A stretch of DNA of 63,895 bases, counting the filler, from Octopus bimaculoides (taxonomy: Eukaryota): assembly GCF_001194135.2 (NCBI RefSeq). It is 5 parts of 5 records of this genome, joined end to end, with 100 filler letters (N's around TTAATTAATTAA, not from the genome) between each part and the next. Parts side by side here need not be neighbours in the genome. Positions count along the whole stretch, not along the records: positions 60,031 to 61,654 come from NW_026391807.1; 4 more parts are not named here. One strand, given 5' to 3'. Shown here in pieces: positions 17,501 to 61,754 of the stretch. The notes under the pieces are model-generated. The model was not told the DNA's origin. It worked only from the letters and a program-made list of their open reading frames with translations, and did no database searches. Made by a program: the position numbers and the translations under genes. The number at the start of each line of letters is the position of its first letter. The stretch's first letter is position 1.

Positions 17501-19732
17501 ACTCACAAGGTTTTGGTCAAGCCACACCACTGATCAATCAATTAATCAATTTTATTTCAATAAAGAAAAGTTTTAATTAGATTTATGATTTCTGTAATTA
17601 ATTTTTTTATAGAAGTTCATTTAAAACTATACTAGTAATACTTTGCTACAATATTTCCATATTTTTTGTGCAATAAATATAGTGTAATGTTGAAAACATT
17701 TTTATTTTCATATTCACTTTTATCTCTACCACATTCAGTCACTCTCTCCATAGAAAAAAAACACTAAATTTACTGTTACAGTCTTCTATAATGTGATAAA
17801 AATATTTGTACATGAATGTAACAGTGATGCCGTTCGTTTCCACTCAAATGTGAAAATCATGTCTTGAGAAGACCCGTCAAAGCCAAGTGAGATCATAGTG
17901 GGTGTTTTTTACGTGATATAGGTGTCATTGACCTGATACCAGCATTGGCCACGATTACGGTCTCACTTGGCTTAACAGGTCTACACAAGTATGGTATATC
18001 GCCAAAGGTCTTGGTTACCTGTCACTGCCTCCAACCATAAGGTCCAACACTTGAATGGTGCTTTTTACATTCCACCAGCACAGGTGCCAGACAGACAGCA
18101 TGGACATCGGCTACGACTATGATTTCACTCGGTTCAACAGGTCTTCACAAGCACAACATATCACCCAACGATTGAAATAGGTGAGGGTTGGTGACAGGAA
18201 AGGCATGCTGCTGTACAAAATCTGCCTCAACACATTTCACCCCACTCACATGGATTCCTCTTATAGCCACTGTATACTCTGCAGATTTGGTTCTTGGTAA
18301 AGATTTCAGAGGTGTAAGTTCACACCATTTGAGCACTACTAAGTGTGTTTTCTATATTGGGCATCTCTGGATCTCATTTGTTGACTCTATATGTGTGTGT
18401 GTGTGTTCGAATTGTTATATTGATGTTTTTGTTTATCTTGTAGGTGTGAACCATGACAATCTGGTCAAGCTATCTGAGCAGTATTTTGGCAACATTACTG
18501 CTGGTTATGATTCAGAAATCCCCATCAGTGCACCTTGCCGCTTTACTGGCTGTGATGTAGGTATATCTCCTCATAATAAACAACTAAACAATCATTATCA
18601 TCATCATCCACTTTCCTAGCTGGCATGGGTTGGTCAGAAAACTGATTTGGCTAGGTTTCTACGGCTGGATGCCTTTCCTAACGCCAACCACTCCAAGAGT
18701 GTAGTGGGTGTTTTTTATGTGGCATGGGTGCCATTGACCTGATACCGGCATCAGCCACAATTACGGTCTCACTTGGCTTAGCAGGTCTACACAAGCATGG
18801 TATATTGCCAAAGGTCTTGGTTACCTGTCACTGCCTCTATAATGTCCAACGCTTGAATGGTGCTTTTTACATGCCACCAGCACAGGTGCCAGTCAGATGG
18901 CACTGGCACTGGCCACGACTATGATTTCACTTGGTTCAACAGGTCTTCACAAGCACAACATATCACCCAACAATTGAAGGGTGCTTTTAATAGGTCAGTT
19001 ACAGGACACTAGCATCAACTATGACTATGATCTCACTTAGCTTTTTCGAGTGTTCTCAACCACGACTCATCTCCAAAGGTCTTGGTCACTTGTCATTGCC
19101 TCTGTGAGACCCAACATTCGAAGATTATTCTTCACCATAACCATTTTTAACATTTTGGGTTTTAAAAAATTTTTTTTTACCATGTCCATCTTCACCAGCA
19201 GACTTTTGCCTTACACTAGCCATTCCTTGCCATCCAATCTTGTGCTTCGCTAGTTTTAGCAAATCAATTTACATTTTCTTTAAGAAAGGGTATATTTGAT
19301 AATGTGGTCTTAGATATTCTATGTCTGAAAATAAAATATAAAAGACAGCAGGAATGTTGTTGACCTGCAATTAAACAAATACAACAGCAGTATCATGAAA
19401 CCTTTATTTGTCATAGCTGGTGTATGTATTATGTACCAGTTTTTGTATTTATGCATAAAGTACTTGTGTGTGTGTATTTATGCATAATATACCAGTGTGT
19501 ATATTTATGAAGAGGTGCTGGAAAGTTCCTGGCTTTAAGAGTATCATGAAAGGCCTAGTTGGTGGTCCAAAGTTCTGAGTTTTTTTTTTTTTTTTTTTTA
19601 CAGGGCTTAGAAAAACTAAAGGACCACTTCAATAAGTGTGTGAATCTGAGAGGGGAATATGTTAAATAAGAGCATAACTGATCATCCCATACTTTCTTCT
19701 ACCCAAAGCCAGGAACTTTTCGGCACCCCCTC

Positions 19733-19807
<75 letters not shown>

Positions 19808-22800
19808 GGACCAAAGTGTGTTTGTGTATTTATGCATAATTACCAGTGTGTGTGCATGTTTATACATAACATATCAGTAAGTTTATGTTTAACTTTGATT
19901 TCTTCACAGATTCGTGTACGTGATGACGACATGCCATTGGCTCATATTGCTTTGGCAGTGGAAGGATGTGGCTGGAGTAATGCAGACAATATTGCTTTAA
20001 TGGTGGCCAACACTCTGATTGGTAGCTGGGATCGCAGTCATGGCGGTGGTGCCAATTTGGCCGGGCGTTTAGCTAGCAATTCTGCCAGAGGCAACCTCTG
20101 CCACAGCTTCCAGGCCTTCAATACCTGTTACACAGACACCGGGATGTGGGGCATCTACTTTGTGTCAGAGAAACTTTCAATTGATGACATGATCTTCAAC
20201 ATACAGAATGAATGGTAAGTTGCTTTTCAGCATCAGCATCATCATCATCATTGCTGTTATTGTCTCCATGGCCAGATGAATAATTGGTTGGATTAGCACA
20301 CGGTGAAAATATATTGCAGAAATGATTAAGTGTATGTAGGACTGAAGAATGTTTTTTTAATACTTGATCCCTCTCTCTTTCTCTCTCTCTCTCTCTTTCT
20401 CTCCCCCTCTCTCTCTCTCTCTCATATTAGTTGTTAAAGAATGAGTGTTGTTTACAGTACACAATGACAACTGGGAATCCTTCTATTCTTCTACTTGTTT
20501 CAGTCATTTGAGTGCAGCCATGCTGGAGCACCACCTTTAGTTGAGCAAATCGACCCCAGGACTTACTTTTTGTAAGCCTAGTACTTATTCTATCGGTCTC
20601 TTTTGCCAAACTGCTAACTTACAGGGATGTAAATGCACCAGCATTGGTTGTCAAGCGATTTTAGGGACACGCACACACACATACTCATATATATATACAC
20701 GACAGGCTTCTTTTCAGTTTCCATCTACCAAATCCTCTCACAAGGCTTTGGTCAGCCTGAAGCTATAGCAGAAGACGCTTGTCCAAGGTGTTACACAGTG
20801 GGACTGAACCCAGAACCATGTGGTTGGTAAGCAAGCTACTTACCACACAGCCACTCTTGCACCTGGAAATTATTTTTTTTCTCCATAACCTCAACAACCA
20901 GTAAAATAATACTTTAGGGTGTAGTGTAGCTAGAAAGAATACATGAAAACTAGGATTTGACAGAAGTGCTTAAAGCAGAATCTGCTAATGGTATTCAAGG
21001 GTTGTTATATCTTCTGTCAGTGAGATTAGAGCCTTCATTAACAGGTCCATTTTGTTACAGTCAGATAATTACTTCTATTACCCAAATACCAACAAAGCCA
21101 AAGTTGTGAAACTATCTCTCCCCATTTTTCCTCACAGGATGCGTCTCTGTAGCAACGTGACTGACTTTGAAATTCAGAGGGCTAAGAATTTGTTGAAGAC
21201 AAACCTTCTCCTTCAGCTTGATGGTTCCACTCCTATATGTGAAGACATTGGCAGGTCAGTATTATTGTTGTTAAGTAACCTTTTTTGATTTGCATGTGTT
21301 TTTCCTGCTGAGTCAGGTTGTGTGATGATAGCCACCACTACTGCTATCGATGTATTTTCCGACATACAGATCAAATTCTTCAGAGCAAAATTTACACCTA
21401 CAATTATGTTAGTCGACTTAGACACCAAGACGACTTGGTGATGTGAAATGCAGCAGGTTTTGGATAAATAGCAACAATGCTTGAATATTTATACTAAATA
21501 TTATATTGCCTTGCATGCCAGAAAACATTGCACCCTACATTGATACCCCACACCTGTTTCCAGTCTAATAGGCTATAAAGCACATTACTGTTACGTCAGT
21601 TTTATTTAGTAATCAATAACTTTGAGGGTTAAGATATTGGACTACTGACCAACAAGTCCATGATCCAAAACCTTAACCTTCACATCCGTTCCAGTTTCTT
21701 TCACTGGCACTAGAACTGGTTCCACTCTTCATTCACAGCTGAGTGTTTGGCAGTAAGAGAGGTCATCCAATACAAACTGTAATTACTTGTGTGTAAATTG
21801 CTCTGCCCCCGAATTTAGTGTTTAATCTTGATACAAAATTTTTACATCTCATAGTTTTAGCTTATGTCACACCCCAGTTTTTTCAATGAAAATCAAGTAT
21901 AAAATATTTATACCCTAGTAAATATAGTGTACCTTCATTATCATTGCTTTACGTCCTCTTTTCCATGCTGGCATGAGTTGGGTGGATTTTTTTTTTTTCT
22001 CAAGCAGTATTCTACAACCAGTTCTCCTTTTAGTTGCCTCTTAAGACATGCAATGAAGCTGGGATTCAATAAGTACAGCAGTGTGGAAAATGGATGAAAA
22101 CAACAAAACTGAAATGAAGATCTCTCTATAAAGTACCTTAACTGACAAGCATTCAATATTTATTCTCCCCACACTGTATGACATTATCTATTGTACATTT
22201 GTAAATAGTTAGTCCTGTTGCAAAGCCTGGACAGGGAGGCTGATTGGCTGGTTGATTGATGAAATCTTCAGTGTTAATCATGTAACCCAATGGCTTATGA
22301 GACTAATTGTCATAACAACAATGTGTATCACTGCTAAATTTCATGGATTAACTTCAGTATTTTTGTCAGGAAGGTTGAGAGGATATTGGGTGTGGTGCTT
22401 AAGGGTACCATGCTACTAGTCTAAGATGGTCATGGATCCAAATTTTTTTTCACTCATTTAGGGATCAACTGAATGCTTTACTACAATGTATCATCCTCGT
22501 TCTTTCACAAGCCCTTACACATAGTTACATTGTCTCATTCACACTCAAACCTTCATTTGTACCTCTCTCTTTCTTTCTCTCTTTTCAGGCAAATGCTTTG
22601 TTATGGCCGAAGGATTCCATTACCAGAACTGGATGCAAGGATTGATGTAAGTCATTTCTACTACCCTCACTTTCACCCATCCATCCACAAACACTATCTC
22701 CACTCATCAGCCCTCTAAACACCATCAGTTCAATCCAAACAGTTTACCAACACAATCATCTGTATATTTTTAAACTCTCAAAAGCTTGTCATTATTGTAA

Positions 22801-58930: not shown

Positions 58931-60217
58931 TTCAATCCTCTTCTTTGAGATAAGCGCACACAATTCCATCAAGCGTCAAAAGTAAGAATTAGAGACAGCA
59001 ACTGTTTCATAATTTTATGATTCATGCCGACAAATGTAATTCCTAGATGAAATTTTAACGAAGAATTTTATTAAGCATATACCTCCACCCCACACCCCAA
59101 ATACACCCTTATATACATTCTATGTAAGTATGCATATATGTATGTATGTATGCATGTATGTATGTATGTATGTATGTNNNNNNNNNNNNNNNNNNNNNNN
59201 NNNNNNNNNNNNNNNNNNNNNNNNNNNNNNNNNNNNNNNNNNNNNNNNNNNNNNNNNNNNNNNNNNNNNNNNNNNNNTTGATTCCTTTGTATGCATATAC
59301 ATATAAATGTATAGATATGTATTTATGAATATTTATGCATATGCATGTATATGTAAAAGTGTATATATATGTATGTATTTATATTTATGACTTAACCTTA
59401 TGAATTTTCTAAACTCTCTGACGAAGCCCAGAGGCACACCCAAGTACCTTAATGTCATCTACCAAATGCTTCAGTTCACTGAAGGGATGGAAGTAAAGTG
59501 GTGTACCATGACCTCTTGGCTGAAACAGCTGTAAGATACTATTCTACTTCCTATGCTCTACGTTACGTATTTTAATAATTACTGGTATTTTTATATTTTT
59601 ATATATTATATATGTAAAGCATAATATGTTATACATGTATGTATACTGTTATAATTGTTGTTTTAAAAAATAAATAAATAGATATAATATAATGTCTAAA
59701 AGTTGATGAATACCACCTCTTCATCTCCATTTTCTTATTGCTGTATAAATTTAGGGTAAAACAACTTTGTATCCTCACCCATTTATTACATTCAGTAATG
59801 TAATTGCCATGCAATGAAAAAACACTTGTGTATTAATAATTGGGTATTCTACCAGCTGTATAAGGATAGACATAATCCCTTAGTTGGTTGGATTCAAAAC
59901 CGCTAACTCTCTTGGAATTATATATATATANNNNNNNNNNNNNNNNNNNNNNNNNNNNNNNNNNNNNNNNNNNNTTAATTAATTAANNNNNNNNNNNNNN
60001 NNNNNNNNNNNNNNNNNNNNNNNNNNNNNNATTATTTTTAACTTTTAGCATGTCTTATTTCTTATTTCACACATTCATTTCTTCTTTGTTTCGTCATATT
60101 CGATCTGATTGTTTTGCTATTGCTTTTTCTCAAGGTTCTTGCTTTTCTATTATTTTTTCATTACTTATTGTTCATTTTTTAAAAATCACTCTCTTTTATC
60201 TTGTAACTTCCTTCATT

Positions 60218-61426
60218 TTAGTTATTCACTCGCTTTTCAAAACAGTGATAGATTTTCAAATGAAATTTTTTTGGCAGCAAAAGCTTGTCTTCTAATTCTT
60301 GTTGTTTATATTTGAAGGATTCAATCCCACCTTTTTTATAAAATGGTATTTTCTCTAATGGGTTTTCCTCTCCAGCTCCATAATCCAAATTGGCTTCACA
60401 GAATATTTTCTCTTGGTCTTCGCCTTGGTAATTTCCATCTTTGTCTGTACCGTTGTATTTATAATGCCGGTAAAACATACTCTCCAATATTTTCTGTGCC
60501 TCTTTGAGACCTTCATTATTCTCATTCTTTAATATTTCCTCCAAAACACTATCTGTAAAATAAGTAAATTTCTTCATATCGTCAACCTTTTCGAAAATTT
60601 TCATGTGTTTATCTGCGGATCTGAATGCCTCTCCAAGTAGCGTATTAAACAGTAGAACAGTTTTGTGTTGGTAAGCTGCTTTATGTAGTCGATATCGGGA
60701 ATAAAACATATCATAGAAATTATCAAGTGTTTTGTCTCTGTAGCATATTTCATCATTTATTACTTTGGACATTTTCATCATTCTTCCGTGATCAAATGAT
60801 TTTCCAATGCCAAGAAAATGAGAATCTCTTGCCAGGTAATCCCATTTATTAACGTCGATTTTATAGTCTGTATTGTTGACAATTTGGTAAAAAAACTTTG
60901 GCTTCTTCTTCTTAGAATTTCTTGGTTCACCAATGATAATATCTTTTATGAAATCAATGTCATCAAGCTCAAGTTCTTTTTTAATATGTCCGTTTTTTTT
61001 AAGAAGTTCATCCAACATTTCGCACGTTGCATTTTCATTTTTCCACTTTTCACCTCCATTTTCCTTGCGATGTTGGTTGATAATTTCTTGAAAGGCGTAA
61101 GAGAAAGGGCCATGTCCTAAATTATGACACAAAGCAGCAATTTCAACACAAAGTATATCTCGATCAGATATTTGCAGATCGGGATTTTGCTCCTTAAGGT
61201 GACGAATCATTTTGCTAGCAAGATAGCATGTCCCCAGACAATGTTCAAATCTGTTATGTGAAGCACATGGATAAACGTAATAAACCAAACCTAATTGTTT
61301 GATATTACGTAATCTCTGGAACTGAATCGTATTGATAATATCTACACAGAGTGGTGGGAGCTGCATAGCCCCATGAATAGCATCCTGAAAAACCTGATCC
61401 CAGTATGTACTGCGTGAGTTGGCCAT
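60218..61426 (-). CDS. SAMHD1: Intronless SAMHD1-like HD-domain protein (402 aa, no SAM domain), predicted catalytically impaired
   Basis: Uninterrupted ORF with an in-frame TAA 10 codons upstream of the ATG. Motifs VFQDAIHG, QFQRLRNIKQLG, ASHNRFEH, LCHNLGHGPFS, IDVNKWDYLARD, RLHKAAYQHK and DYG...NP align along the human SAMHD1 HD domain. The symbol denotes the family, not proven orthology. Confidence 0.88.
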   Translation of the reverse strand: MANSRSTYWDQVFQDAIHGAMQLPPLCVDIINTIQFQRLRNIKQLGLVYYVYPCASHNRFEHCLGTCYLASKMIRHLKEQNPDLQISDRDILCVEIAALCHNLGHGPFSYAFQEIINQHRKENGGEKWKNENATCEMLDELLKKNGHIKKELELDDIDFIKDIIIGEPRNSKKKKPKFFYQIVNNTDYKIDVNKWDYLARDSHFLGIGKSFDHGRMMKMSKVINDEICYRDKTLDNFYDMFYSRYRLHKAAYQHKTVLLFNTLLGEAFRSADKHMKIFEKVDDMKKFTYFTDSVLEEILKNENNEGLKEAQKILESMFYRHYKYNGTDKDGNYQGEDQEKIFCEANLDYGAGEENPLEKIPFYKKGGIESFKYKQQELEDKLLLPKKFHLKIYHCFEKRVNN

Positions 61427-61754
61427 TATGAAATATTCAGGAAAATATCTAACTTACTTGTTAGTTGCTTTCTATATTGCTATTTTCGCTGCTGGTGGCC
61501 TTGTTGTTACGTTTGTTGGTTTTGAAATATTGAGTAGAAATATGAATTATACAGACGTGTTCAGTACGATATTTCTAATATTTGATTTGAAAAGATCCCA
61601 GTCCCATTGGCATTTAGATGTCTGATGTCAGAAATAATATAAGCGATCTAAAAGNNNNNNNNNNNNNNNNNNNNNNNNNNNNNNNNNNNNNNNNNNNNTT
61701 AATTAATTAANNNNNNNNNNNNNNNNNNNNNNNNNNNNNNNNNNNNNNNNNNNN

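What the first reader, a model, noticed from the sequence alone, without database searches (positions are those of the whole stretch)
60218..61426. Intact SAMHD1-like ORF with the catalytic site selectively dismantled: candidate pseudo-dNTPase
Against human SAMHD1, the metal and catalytic positions read H167 kept (H62), H206 kept (H101), D207 to N102, H210 kept, H215 to Y110, D218 to Q113, H233 to N130 and D311 to N193. Allosteric D137 is N32. By contrast Q142, R143, R145, Q149, R164, K312, Y315, D319, D330, R333, K354, N358, R366, H370, Y374, Q375, H376, K377, R451 and K455 equivalents are retained, and 402 codons have no stop or frameshift. D207 and D311 substitutions are the standard dNTPase-dead mutations. 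Loss concentrated on catalysis with the scaffold preserved suggests selection for a non-catalytic role. Options include a nucleotide or nucleic-acid sensor, a dominant-negative or regulatory subunit of hetero-tetramers, a decoy for viral antagonists, or a dNTPase-independent retroelement restriction factor in a LINE-rich genome.
Basis: partly seen in the sequence, partly recalled or inferred. Interest (0 to 1): 0.8.

Follow-up and report, generated by a model that had tools for sequence, protein, structure and literature searches.

The report
Octopus SAMHD1 copy with dead active site
This octopus gene encodes a complete, well-folded copy of the antiviral dNTP-degrading enzyme SAMHD1 whose catalytic residues were replaced; evolution has kept the copy intact in three octopus species and it is made as protein in one, so it is a naturally occurring 'dead enzyme' with some non-catalytic job.

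Summary
Window 60218-61426 (minus strand) is an uninterrupted 402-codon SAMHD1 homologue (E~1e-80 to human SAMHD1; AlphaFold pLDDT 92.9; TM 0.90 to the human catalytic core). It carries D207N, H215Y, D218Q, H233N and D311N, while the substrate-pocket and allosteric-site-2 residues are kept. The piece is an unplaced 1.6-kb contig of Octopus bimaculoides.

Two corrections. D137N and D218Q are not part of the dismantling: HD-intact octopod paralogues share both, and D137N also occurs in canonical-type Argonauta and coral proteins.

The gene belongs to a monophyletic 'HN clade' found in O. bimaculoides, O. vulgaris and O. sinensis. The clade lies inside a tandem array of single-exon SAMHD1-like genes and often sits head-to-head with HD-intact copies. 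All seven full-length HN copies are intact, whereas other array members have decayed. dN/dS is 0.35-0.5, and 0 of 3000 neutral simulations keep the frame open. Four of the six changes at family-invariant columns hit catalytic residues (P=4.5e-4). An O. vulgaris HN protein was detected in a skin-mucus proteome.

Verdict: a selected, translated pseudo-dNTPase. It most likely binds nucleotides and oligomerises without hydrolysing. Its partner and role are not determined.

The parts
60218..61426 (-). Complete single-exon coding sequence (402 codons plus stop) of an HN-clade SAMHD1-like protein, a pseudo-dNTPase
   Evidence: ORF list. Human SAMHD1 E~1e-80. Source is the O. bimaculoides contig LGKD02096939.1. 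AlphaFold2 pLDDT 92.9, pTM 0.92. Foldseek TM 0.90 to the human SAMHD1 catalytic core.
60827..61252 (-). HD-domain match (residues 59-200)
   Evidence: Pfam PF01966, E=1.4e-9, 38.7 bits against a cut-off of 22.
61241..61243 (-). H62, equivalent to human H167 (metal ligand, retained)
   Evidence: Alignment in human numbering.
61121..61126 (-). H101-N102 (CAT AAT), equivalent to the human H206-D207 'HD' motif, here 'HN': the metal-bridging Asp is replaced by Asn
   Evidence: All seven HN copies read AAT; all HD-type copies read GAT/GAC. H206R/D207N is the metal-disrupting inactive mutant used for human crystal structures (PMC7311409).
61097..61099 (-). Y110 (TAC), equivalent to human H215, the general acid
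   Evidence: Human H215A has no detectable activity but still tetramerises and binds substrate (PMC7311409).
61088..61090 (-). Q113 (CAA), equivalent to human D218, the partner of H215. This change predates the HN clade and is shared with HD-intact octopod paralogues.
   Evidence: Human D218A lowers kcat about 40-fold.
61037..61039 (-). N130 (AAT), equivalent to human H233, the Mg ligand of the Fe-Mg centre
   Evidence: Human H233A is about 300-fold down.
60848..60850 (-). N193 (AAT), equivalent to human D311, a metal ligand. N in 5 of 7 HN copies; D (GAT) in two O. sinensis copies.
61331..61333 (-). N32 (AAT), equivalent to human D137 in allosteric site 1. Not clade-specific: also N in HD-intact paralogues, canonical-type Argonauta and coral.
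   Evidence: Human D137N switches the AL1 activator from GTP to XTP with normal catalysis.
61427..61654 (-). 5' flank of the gene (228 nt). It is part of the duplicated array unit and is homologous to the upstream regions of O. vulgaris/O. sinensis HN copies and of HD-type copies.
   Evidence: blastn. 84-88% identity with 2-3 gap columns, against 91-92% in the ORF.
60031..60217 (-). 3' flank (187 nt), homologous to the 3' flanks of O. vulgaris/O. sinensis HN copies. No canonical AATAAA within it.

Best explanation
The ORF is a functional gene for a catalytically dead SAMHD1 paralogue, a pseudo-dNTPase.

Shown:
- It belongs to an Octopus-genus clade (the 'HN clade') inside a tandemly amplified family of single-exon SAMHD1-like genes that lack a SAM domain.
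- In the clade's ancestor the metal-bridging Asp207, the general acid His215 and the Mg ligand His233 became Asn, Tyr and Asn. This happened on a background that had already lost Asp218. Asp311 became Asn in most copies.
- Since then the protein has been kept under purifying selection.
- It is predicted to fold as a complete SAMHD1 catalytic core.
- An orthologous copy is translated in O. vulgaris.

Inferred from human mutant data: it cannot hydrolyse dNTPs by the Fe-Mg mechanism. Single changes at four of these positions in the human enzyme abolish activity or cut it 40- to 300-fold (H206R/D207N, H215A, D218A, H233A), and H233A, D311A and H206A/D207A are all used there as dNTPase-defective controls.

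Inferred from what is conserved: the substrate-pocket residues (Q149, R164, K312, Y315, D319, R366, H370, Y374, Q375) and the allosteric-site-2 residues, which are contributed by several subunits of a tetramer (D330, R333, R352, K354, N358, H376, K377, K523), are retained. The replacements are near-isosteric (D->N, H->Y, H->N). So the protein most likely still binds (d)NTPs and assembles into nucleotide-bridged oligomers without turning the nucleotide over.

Most likely mode of action (inference, least certain): it acts as a non-catalytic subunit that co-assembles with the HD-intact paralogues encoded next to it, tuning or scaffolding their activity in an innate-immune setting. A homo-oligomeric nucleotide or nucleic-acid binder is the main alternative.
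For: Identity and fold.

Catalytic table and retained pockets.

Selective loss: 4 of 6 clade-wide changes at 73 family-invariant columns are catalytic (P=4.5e-4), and 62 of 73 columns are untouched.

Clade: seven intact copies in O. bimaculoides, O. vulgaris and O. sinensis. Monophyly has 100% bootstrap for the core six and 77% for all seven, with an Argonauta HD-intact copy outside.

Selection:
- NG86 omega 0.34-0.37, bootstrap CI 0.22-0.59.
- YN00/ML 0.41-0.48 and LWL85 about 0.5.
- 0 of 3000 neutral simulations stay open.
- The ORF has only one indel, 6 nt and in frame, while the short flanks have 2-3 gap columns each.
- Decayed array members serve as an internal control.

Translation: OctVul6B005787P1/A0AA36FCK9 is identical to the ORF at L002:15431-16672. 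It is a high-confidence master protein in the O. vulgaris skin-mucus proteome, with 24% coverage, 9 peptides, 15 PSMs, 6 group-unique peptides and 1 protein-unique peptide (PMC11431876 Suppl. S1).

Human mutants: H215A is inactive but tetramerises and binds substrate. H233A is ~300-fold down, D218A ~40-fold down, and H206R/D207N disrupts metal binding (PMC7311409). H233A, D311A and H206A/D207A are used as dNTP-hydrolysis-defective mutants (PMC4489885). H206/D207 mutation barely alters structure or tetramerisation (PMC12090746).

Pairing: HD-type and HN-type genes lie head-to-head, 2.7-4.7 kb apart, in L002, L003, L004 and L005. HD-type paralogues are detected in the same proteome.
Against: - There is no biochemical assay. 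Loss of activity is inferred from human point mutants, and the octopod family had already lost D218, so its chemistry may differ from the human enzyme.
- No expression data exist for the O. bimaculoides gene itself, and no run-assembly transcript of it turned up.
- The proteomic support rests on summary statistics; the peptides themselves were not in the stored part of the table.
- Omega of 0.35-0.5 is only moderate constraint.
- Gene conversion occurs in the array (Ovu_HN3 is a mosaic). It could help keep frames open and blurs orthology.
- AL1 residues K116, N119 and D137 are changed across the whole octopod family.
- K312Q in three copies and R366L in one copy show that the pocket is not inviolate.
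- Hetero-oligomerisation is suggested only by gene adjacency, co-detection and retained interface-spanning sites. A homo-oligomer fits equally well.
- The contig is 1.6 kb and unplaced, so the O. bimaculoides context is unknown.
Confidence: 0.6

Rival explanations
1. Stand-alone non-catalytic effector. The HN protein acts on its own, as a homo-oligomer or monomer, through one of the dNTPase-independent activities known for SAMHD1: single-stranded nucleic-acid binding, protein-protein interactions in DNA repair, or damping of innate signalling. Alternatively it acts as a dNTP sensor or sequestering protein. It would have no functional tie to the HD-intact neighbours.
For: Dead human SAMHD1 mutants keep several dNTPase-independent functions: R366C/H keep DSB repair, CtIP and cyclin A2 binding, and innate immune suppression (PMC8497992; review PMC12090746). 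The retained pockets and scaffold fit this reading as well as they fit hetero-oligomers.
Against: The human partners and regulatory sites lie partly in regions this protein lacks: there is no SAM domain, and the C-terminus ends near human residue 559, so T592, K580 and K595 are absent. The repeated head-to-head pairing with HD-type genes would be coincidental.
Confidence: 0.22
2. Still an enzyme with altered chemistry. H167 and H206 remain, and N207/N311 (through their carbonyl oxygens) and Y215 (as an acid) could support a different metal, a different substrate or a slower reaction.
For: The replacements are conservative isosteres rather than random residues, and the substrate-pocket residues are retained. 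The whole octopod family had already changed D218 yet kept the other catalytic residues, which suggests lineage-specific chemistry. Two O. sinensis HN copies have D311.
Against: Three to five residues, each individually critical in the human enzyme, are changed together (PMC7311409). One O. sinensis copy adds H210Y and H233K, showing further drift at the site. 197 of 224 family members keep all eight positions.
Confidence: 0.1
3. RNA-editing-gated metal site. Coleoid A-to-I recoding of the two AAU Asn codons (N102, N193) to IAU (read as Asp) restores the HD...D metal ligands in some tissues or conditions.
For: Both Asn codons are AAT and both are preceded by T (CAT|AAT, GTT|AAT). From my own knowledge, a 5' U is the ADAR-favoured neighbour and N-to-D recoding is common in coleoids. 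Position 311 varies A/G among paralogues.
Against: Y110 (TAC) and N130 (AAT) cannot be edited back to His. H215A alone abolishes activity and H233A cuts it ~300-fold. No editing data were examined. The context argument is weak, since about a quarter of sites have a 5' T by chance.
Confidence: 0.04
4. Young non-functional pseudogene, or an assembly artefact, that has not yet acquired a stop.
For: The contig is short and unplaced. The HD-type O. bimaculoides contig L006 needs three frames. There is no transcript evidence in this species.
Against: The substitutions predate the O. bimaculoides/O. vulgaris split (dS about 0.15-0.2). Seven copies are all open. Omega is below 1, and neutral simulations never stay open. 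The same codons occur in independent assemblies of two other species. The orthologue was detected as protein.
Confidence: 0.04

Closest known systems
Human SAMHD1 (dNTP triphosphohydrolase; PDB 4BZC, 6TX0, 4ZWG and others)
   Same: The catalytic-core fold is the same (TM 0.90, ~38% identity). H167, H206 and H210 are kept. So are the substrate-pocket residues, 10 of 11 allosteric-site-2 residues, and AL1 residues Q142, R145, R451 and K455.
   Different: D207N, H215Y, D218Q, H233N and D311N. There is no SAM domain. The C-terminus ends near human residue 559, so the T592 regulatory tail is absent. There are internal deletions around human 278-299 and 462-499. The CDS is a single exon in a tandem array.
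Engineered inactive human SAMHD1 mutants (H206R/D207N, H206A/D207A 'HD/AA', H215A, H233A, D311A)
   Same: The same positions are hit. The engineered mutants keep fold and tetramerisation, and nucleotide still binds in the pocket of H215A and H206R/D207N (PMC7311409; PMC12090746). The predicted structure matches the 7LU5, 7LTT and 7A5Y mutant structures as well as it matches wild type.
   Different: Here the changes arose naturally, are combined at 4-5 positions, and have been maintained by selection across species.
HD-intact octopod SAMHD1-like paralogues (for example P0005, P0006, P0008; L002:5212-4055; Argonauta P0014 and P0016)
   Same: 66-72% identical, single-exon, without a SAM domain, in the same tandem array, and sharing D137N and D218Q/E.
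   Different: They retain D207, H215, H233 and D311. They have G211A, whereas the HN clade keeps the canonical Gly.
Pseudoenzymes in general (pseudokinases and similar dead paralogues of active enzymes)
   Same: This is a paralogue of an active enzyme that lacks the catalytic residues but is conserved and expressed. It is encoded beside its active relatives.
   Different: I found no pseudoenzyme member of the SAMHD1 family described in the searchable literature.

Membership tests
SAMHD1-type dNTP triphosphohydrolase (HD-domain superfamily) | Sequence and fold homology to the SAMHD1 catalytic core | tested here: met
   phmmer E~1e-80 to human SAMHD1. Pfam HD E=1.4e-9. AF2 pLDDT 92.9. Foldseek TM 0.90.
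SAMHD1-type dNTP triphosphohydrolase (HD-domain superfamily) | H...HD...D metal-binding tetrad (H167, H206, D207, D311) | tested here: not met
   H62 and H101 are kept; D207->N102 and D311->N193.
SAMHD1-type dNTP triphosphohydrolase (HD-domain superfamily) | Catalytic residues H210, the H215/D218 dyad, and H233 | tested here: not met
   H210 is kept; H215->Y, D218->Q, H233->N. Residue roles are from PMC7311409.
SAMHD1-type dNTP triphosphohydrolase (HD-domain superfamily) | Substrate-pocket residues (Q149, R164, K312, Y315, D319, R366, H370, Y374, Q375) | tested here: met
   All nine are retained in the window protein.
SAMHD1-type dNTP triphosphohydrolase (HD-domain superfamily) | Allosteric site 2 (V156, F157, D330, R333, R352, K354, N358, R372, H376, K377, K523) | tested here: met
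   9 of 11 are identical; the exceptions are F157Y (conservative) and R372A. R372 is also changed in all other octopod paralogues.
SAMHD1-type dNTP triphosphohydrolase (HD-domain superfamily) | Allosteric site 1 (K116, V117, N119, D137, Q142, R145, R451, K455) | tested here: inconclusive
   V117, Q142, R145, R451 and K455 are kept. K116Q, N119Q and D137N are family-wide in octopods and not clade-specific.
SAMHD1-type dNTP triphosphohydrolase (HD-domain superfamily) | N-terminal SAM domain | tested here: not met
   Only the HD domain is found. The protein starts 10 residues before the equivalent of human K116. Many invertebrate and fish 'SAMHD1-like' proteins also lack the SAM domain.
SAMHD1-type dNTP triphosphohydrolase (HD-domain superfamily) | dNTP triphosphohydrolase activity and nucleotide-dependent tetramerisation | not testable with these tools
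   This needs recombinant protein. It is inferred absent (activity) and present (oligomerisation) from the residue patterns.
Pseudoenzyme (catalytically dead, functional paralogue of an enzyme) | Essential catalytic residues replaced | tested here: met
Pseudoenzyme (catalytically dead, functional paralogue of an enzyme) | Maintained by purifying selection after the loss | tested here: met
   Omega 0.35-0.5, CI below 1. Seven intact copies in three species. Neutral simulation 0 of 3000. Only an in-frame indel.
Pseudoenzyme (catalytically dead, functional paralogue of an enzyme) | Expressed as a protein | tested here: inconclusive
   Met for the O. vulgaris orthologue (skin-mucus proteome). There are no data for the O. 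bimaculoides gene in the window.
Pseudoenzyme (catalytically dead, functional paralogue of an enzyme) | Demonstrated lack of the ancestral activity | not testable with these tools
   Needs an enzyme assay.

The most novel reading that the evidence does not exclude
The two lost Asp metal ligands are encoded as AAU codons in an ADAR-favoured context (5' U). In a coleoid, A-to-I recoding could therefore recreate the HD...D metal site post-transcriptionally. The HN genes would then be editing-gated SAMHD1 subunits whose metal binding, and hence behaviour inside mixed tetramers, is switched by tissue or condition rather than fixed in the genome.
Probability: 0.04. Interest if true: 0.85.

Novelty: new variant of a known kind. 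Interest (0 to 1): 0.62.

Why it matters
A long-running dispute about SAMHD1 concerns which of its antiviral, anti-retroelement, DNA-repair and immune-damping roles need dNTP hydrolysis. That work relies on engineered dead mutants, and the results conflict. For example, two groups disagree on whether D311A still restricts LINE-1 (PMC4489885).

A lineage in which evolution made a dead SAMHD1 and kept it for a divergence of dS about 0.15-0.2, beside active paralogues, is a natural separation-of-function experiment. Whatever this protein still does is a dNTPase-independent function important enough to be selected.

It also adds SAMHD1 to the enzyme families with pseudoenzyme members. And it points to an unstudied, tandemly expanded SAMHD1-like gene family in octopus, with proteins present in skin mucus, as part of cephalopod innate immunity.

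The practical limit is that everything beyond 'dead, conserved and translated' is inference.

Tried and rejected
1. Pseudogene or assembly-error reading. Rejected by dN/dS, the neutral simulation, intact copies in three species and the proteomics.

2. 'D311 kept in O. sinensis (P0002)' as evidence against a dead clade. P0002 is a chimeric gene model. It follows the HN copy at L003:10001 up to about residue 285 and then the HD-type copy at L003:38330. Two real O. sinensis HN copies do have D311. There it is an isolated A/G site, not a long conversion tract.

3. D137N and D218Q as part of the dismantling. Rejected: both are shared with HD-intact relatives.

4. Retrogene origin specific to the dead clade. 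Not supported: every octopod family member seen has a single-exon CDS, including canonical-type Argonauta P0072.

5. Search for the actual HN-specific peptides in the proteome supplement. They are not in the stored, truncated part of the peptide table.

6. Third protein-database search with the 143-aa catalytic segment, to find partial HN transcripts or other species. Unproductive: 41 candidates, and its own cluster was not recovered.

7. Search for a canonical Octopus SAMHD1 orthologue with Argonauta P0072. No annotated Octopus protein appeared in the top 120; the only close relative was a run-assembly protein, P0031.

8. Bacterial-type promoter and terminator scan, poly(A) signal, Rfam, tandem repeats and composition of the piece. 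Nothing above chance, and the bacterial scans are not relevant to an animal gene.

9. Literature searches for a described inactive SAMHD1 paralogue or a cephalopod/mollusc SAMHD1 expansion. None found.
Full report
WHAT IS THERE. The piece (window 60031-61654) is the whole of a 1,624-bp unplaced contig of Octopus bimaculoides, GCA_001194135.2 LGKD02096939.1. On the minus strand, 60218-61426 is an uninterrupted ATG-to-stop frame of 402 codons, with an in-frame stop 27 nt upstream of the ATG. The other listed ORFs are short and sit on an AT-rich background. There is no Rfam match, no notable repeat and no compositional break.

The protein matches the Pfam HD domain (E=1.4e-9) and human SAMHD1 chains at E~1e-80 over residues 11-329, with a weaker C-terminal stretch. 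An AlphaFold2 model built on a 38-sequence family alignment is very confident (pLDDT 92.9, pTM 0.92). It superposes on tetrameric human SAMHD1 catalytic cores with TM 0.90 and rmsd 2.9 A. It matches the inactive H206R/D207N and H215A mutant structures as well as it matches wild type. So this is a complete SAMHD1 catalytic-core scaffold. It has no SAM domain and lacks the C-terminal regulatory tail.

CHECK OF THE OBSERVATION. I aligned the protein with human SAMHD1. I had typed the human sequence from memory and verified it against the segments HMMER printed from the PDB. I aligned it also with octopod paralogues and with canonical invertebrate proteins.

- H167, H206 and H210 are kept.
- D207->N102, H215->Y110, D218->Q113, H233->N130, D311->N193 and D137->N32.

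The pattern is not chance. Of 73 columns invariant in 14 other family members, 62 are untouched in all HN-type copies. Six are changed in at least 5 of 7 copies, and four of those six are catalytic (hypergeometric P=4.5e-4). Among 224 SAMHD1-family proteins, 197 have all eight catalytic positions, and only this Octopus group has several changed at once.

Two corrections:
- D137N is also present in every octopod paralogue, in the canonical-type Argonauta protein and in a coral SAMHD1.
- D218->Q/E is present in all HD-intact octopod paralogues.

Both changes are therefore older and are not part of the clade-specific loss. In the human enzyme, D137N merely switches the AL1 activator from GTP to XTP (PMC7311409).

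RELATIVES AND GENOMIC SETTING. The closest proteins are all octopod. Fetching their loci showed a tandem array of single-exon SAMHD1-like genes on one O. vulgaris chromosome (OX597824.1, 24.97-25.21 Mb) and on O. sinensis CM016869.1.

A tblastn scan of those loci recovered seven full-length 'HN' copies, counting the window's. Every one is an open frame of 391-413 codons with D207N, H215Y and H233N. D311N is present in five of the seven. One O. sinensis copy additionally has H210Y and H233K. Interleaved with them are HD-intact copies.

HD-type and HN-type genes lie head-to-head, 2.7-4.7 kb apart, in L002, L003, L004 and L005. L004 and L005 are near-identical duplicates, and L002 and L003 are orthologous between species, so these amount to about two independent instances. 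The whole 1,624-bp piece, flanks included, aligns at ~90% to the O. vulgaris and O. sinensis HN loci.

A neighbour-joining tree on the codon alignment puts the HN copies in one clade, with 100% bootstrap for the core six and 77% for all seven. That clade is sister to the Octopus HD-intact copies, and an Argonauta HD-intact copy lies outside. The catalytic losses therefore happened once, after the Octopus/Argonauta split and before the O. bimaculoides/O. vulgaris split.

The divergent seventh copy (Ovu_HN3) is a gene-conversion mosaic. It is HN-type across the catalytic region and HD-type near the C-terminus. The D311 in two O. sinensis copies is an isolated A/G difference flanked by HN-type sites, not a long conversion tract.

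IS IT UNDER SELECTION?
- Between the window gene and its O. vulgaris/O. sinensis counterparts, dN is about 0.07 and dS about 0.15-0.21.
- Omega is 0.34-0.37 by NG86, with a bootstrap 95% CI of 0.22-0.59 and no replicate at or above 1.
- Omega is 0.41-0.48 by YN00 and ML, and about 0.5 by LWL85.
- All of this divergence accrued after the catalytic residues were lost.
- Simulated neutral evolution over the same divergence left the frame open in 0 of 3000 runs.
- The ORF differs from its orthologues by a single 6-nt in-frame indel, whereas the 228-nt and 187-nt flanks each carry 2-3 gap columns.
- The array supplies its own control. An HD-type copy at L004/L005 (~19.1-20.5 kb) has at least two frameshifts. 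There are 87-codon HN-type stubs in L002 and L003. The O. bimaculoides HD-type contig L006 can only be read in three frames.

So family members do decay, and the HN genes have not. The constraint is moderate. It is similar to or tighter than that among the HD-intact paralogues, whose omega is 0.4-0.9.

IS IT EXPRESSED? No transcript evidence for the O. bimaculoides gene was available. For O. vulgaris, a TMT proteome of skin mucus (PMC11431876) lists OctVul6B005787P1/A0AA36FCK9 as a high-confidence master protein. Its 413-aa sequence is identical to the HN ORF at L002:15431-16672. The entry shows 24% coverage, 9 peptides, 15 PSMs, 6 peptides unique to its protein group and 1 unique to the protein. 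HD-type paralogues were found in the same samples, and some were more abundant in senescent or aquarium-kept animals. The peptide sequences themselves were not in the stored part of the supplement.

WHAT IT MOST LIKELY DOES. Established mechanism (PMC7311409): the HD-motif residues hold an Fe that forms a bimetallic centre with a Mg ligated by H233, and H215, polarised by D218, protonates the leaving group.
- H215A has no detectable activity yet tetramerises and binds substrate normally.
- H233A is ~300-fold down and D218A ~40-fold down.
- H206R/D207N is the metal-disrupting mutant used to trap nucleotide-bound tetramers.
- Mutating H206/D207 leaves structure and tetramerisation essentially unchanged (PMC12090746).
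- H233A, D311A and H206A/D207A are all used as hydrolysis-defective controls (PMC4489885).

A protein combining D207N, H215Y, D218Q, H233N and D311N should therefore be unable to hydrolyse dNTPs by this route. This is an inference.

What selection has kept is informative. All nine substrate-pocket residues are retained. Nearly all allosteric-site-2 residues are retained, and that site is built from several chains of the tetramer. The replacements are near-isosteric.

The best-supported reading is a nucleotide-binding, oligomerising, non-hydrolysing SAMHD1. Given the recurrent head-to-head pairing with HD-intact genes and their co-detection, I rank a non-catalytic subunit of mixed oligomers with the active paralogues first. 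A stand-alone dNTPase-independent effector ranks second; dead human mutants keep several such functions (PMC8497992). Altered chemistry, editing-restored Asp ligands and a plain pseudogene rank lower, for the reasons given under the rival explanations.

In one study catalytic mutants of human SAMHD1 lost LINE-1 restriction, and another group disagreed for D311A.

COMPARISON WITH WHAT IS KNOWN. By homology and fold this is a SAMHD1-family protein. By the family's defining catalytic features (the H...HD...D tetrad, the H215/D218 dyad and H233) it fails membership as an enzyme, and it lacks the SAM domain. It meets the working definition of a pseudoenzyme on residues and selection. On expression it meets the definition only for the orthologue.

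Databases label these proteins simply 'SAMHD1 homolog' or 'HD domain-containing protein'. I found no paper describing an inactive SAMHD1 paralogue or a cephalopod SAMHD1 expansion. I therefore rate it a new variant of a known kind.

LIMITS.
- No assay was run, and there are no O. bimaculoides expression data.
- The contig is short and unplaced.
- Pairwise omega comes from paralogues in an array with gene conversion.
- The proteomic evidence is summary statistics only.
- The mode of action is inferred from residue conservation and gene order alone.

Noticed in passing
L003:10001-39553 (O. sinensis CM016869.1); protein P0002: The RefSeq model 'SAMHD1 homolog isoform X1' is a chimera. It follows the HN copy at L003:10001 to about residue 285 and then jumps ~28 kb to the 3' part of the HD-type copy at L003:38330. 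This looks like an annotation artefact in the tandem array.
   Followed up: yes
L002:9941-11182 and L004/L005:9812-10987 (O. vulgaris): The deposited models P0003 (393 aa) and P0007 (328 aa) are truncated at the 5' end. The genomic frames run to upstream ATGs, giving 413-aa and 391-aa proteins that include H167.
   Followed up: yes
L006:69-1383 (O. bimaculoides LGKD02126151.1); proteins P0004, P0009: The HD-intact O. bimaculoides paralogue can only be read by switching through three frames, and the gene models bridge the shifts with introns. It is either a pseudogene or contains indel errors in a short contig.
   Followed up: partly
L004 and L005, ~19090-20500: An HD-type family member with at least two frameshifts (a decayed copy). 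87-codon HN-type N-terminal stubs also lie at L002:18901-19161 and L003:24632-24372.
   Followed up: partly
L002, L003, L004, L005: HD-intact and HN genes recur as divergently oriented (head-to-head) pairs 2.7-4.7 kb apart. This suggests a shared regulatory region. I did not analyse the intergenic sequence.
   Followed up: partly
L004 vs L005 (OX597824.1 24,970,932-24,991,918 and 25,015,141-25,036,127): Two 21-kb segments 44 kb apart carry the same HD/HN/decayed-copy unit, with an identical P0007 protein. This is either a recent segmental duplication or an assembly duplication.
   Followed up: no
Human position 218 in all octopod single-exon paralogues (e.g. L002:5212-4055, P0005, P0006, P0014, P0016): Even the 'HD-intact' octopod paralogues have Q or E in place of D218. 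The human D218A mutant loses ~40-fold in kcat, so the nominally active family members may be slow or differently tuned enzymes. D218E also appears in a few fish and amphioxus proteins.
   Followed up: partly
Human position 137 in P0072 (Argonauta), P0101 (coral) and all octopod paralogues: The AL1 residue D137 is Asn in several canonical-looking invertebrate SAMHD1s. In the human enzyme D137N changes the activator from GTP to XTP, so the AL1 ligand may differ in these lineages.
   Followed up: no
P0120 (Gasterosteus aculeatus) and P0115 (Gadus morhua): Two fish SAMHD1-like paralogues each carry one classic inactivating change: LCHNLGH (D207N) in stickleback and IDVNKFDY (D311N) in cod. They may be independent dead or weakened paralogues in fish expansions.
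   Followed up: no
P0005, P0008, P0015, P0018 (O. sinensis / O. vulgaris): Long HD-intact paralogues carry a repeat-rich insert of ~150 aa (recurring ...TSESKMQSNIEGTI... units) between the catalytic core and the C-terminal lobe. One of them (A0A6P7U4P1) is among the mucus proteins raised in senescent animals.
   Followed up: no
L008:3001-4341 (Argonauta hians), P0072; L009/L010 (Logan SRR11869391, SRR11869384), P0031: The canonical-type cephalopod SAMHD1 (all eight catalytic residues) also has a single-exon CDS and no SAM domain. No annotated Octopus orthologue appeared among its top 120 hits; the only close relative was a run-assembly protein of unknown species at 64% identity.
   Followed up: partly
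HN-clade alignment, human positions 237 and 130: Besides the catalytic residues, the only family-invariant positions changed clade-wide are S237T (7 of 7 copies, four residues after H233) and P130S (5 of 7). Their significance is unknown.
   Followed up: no
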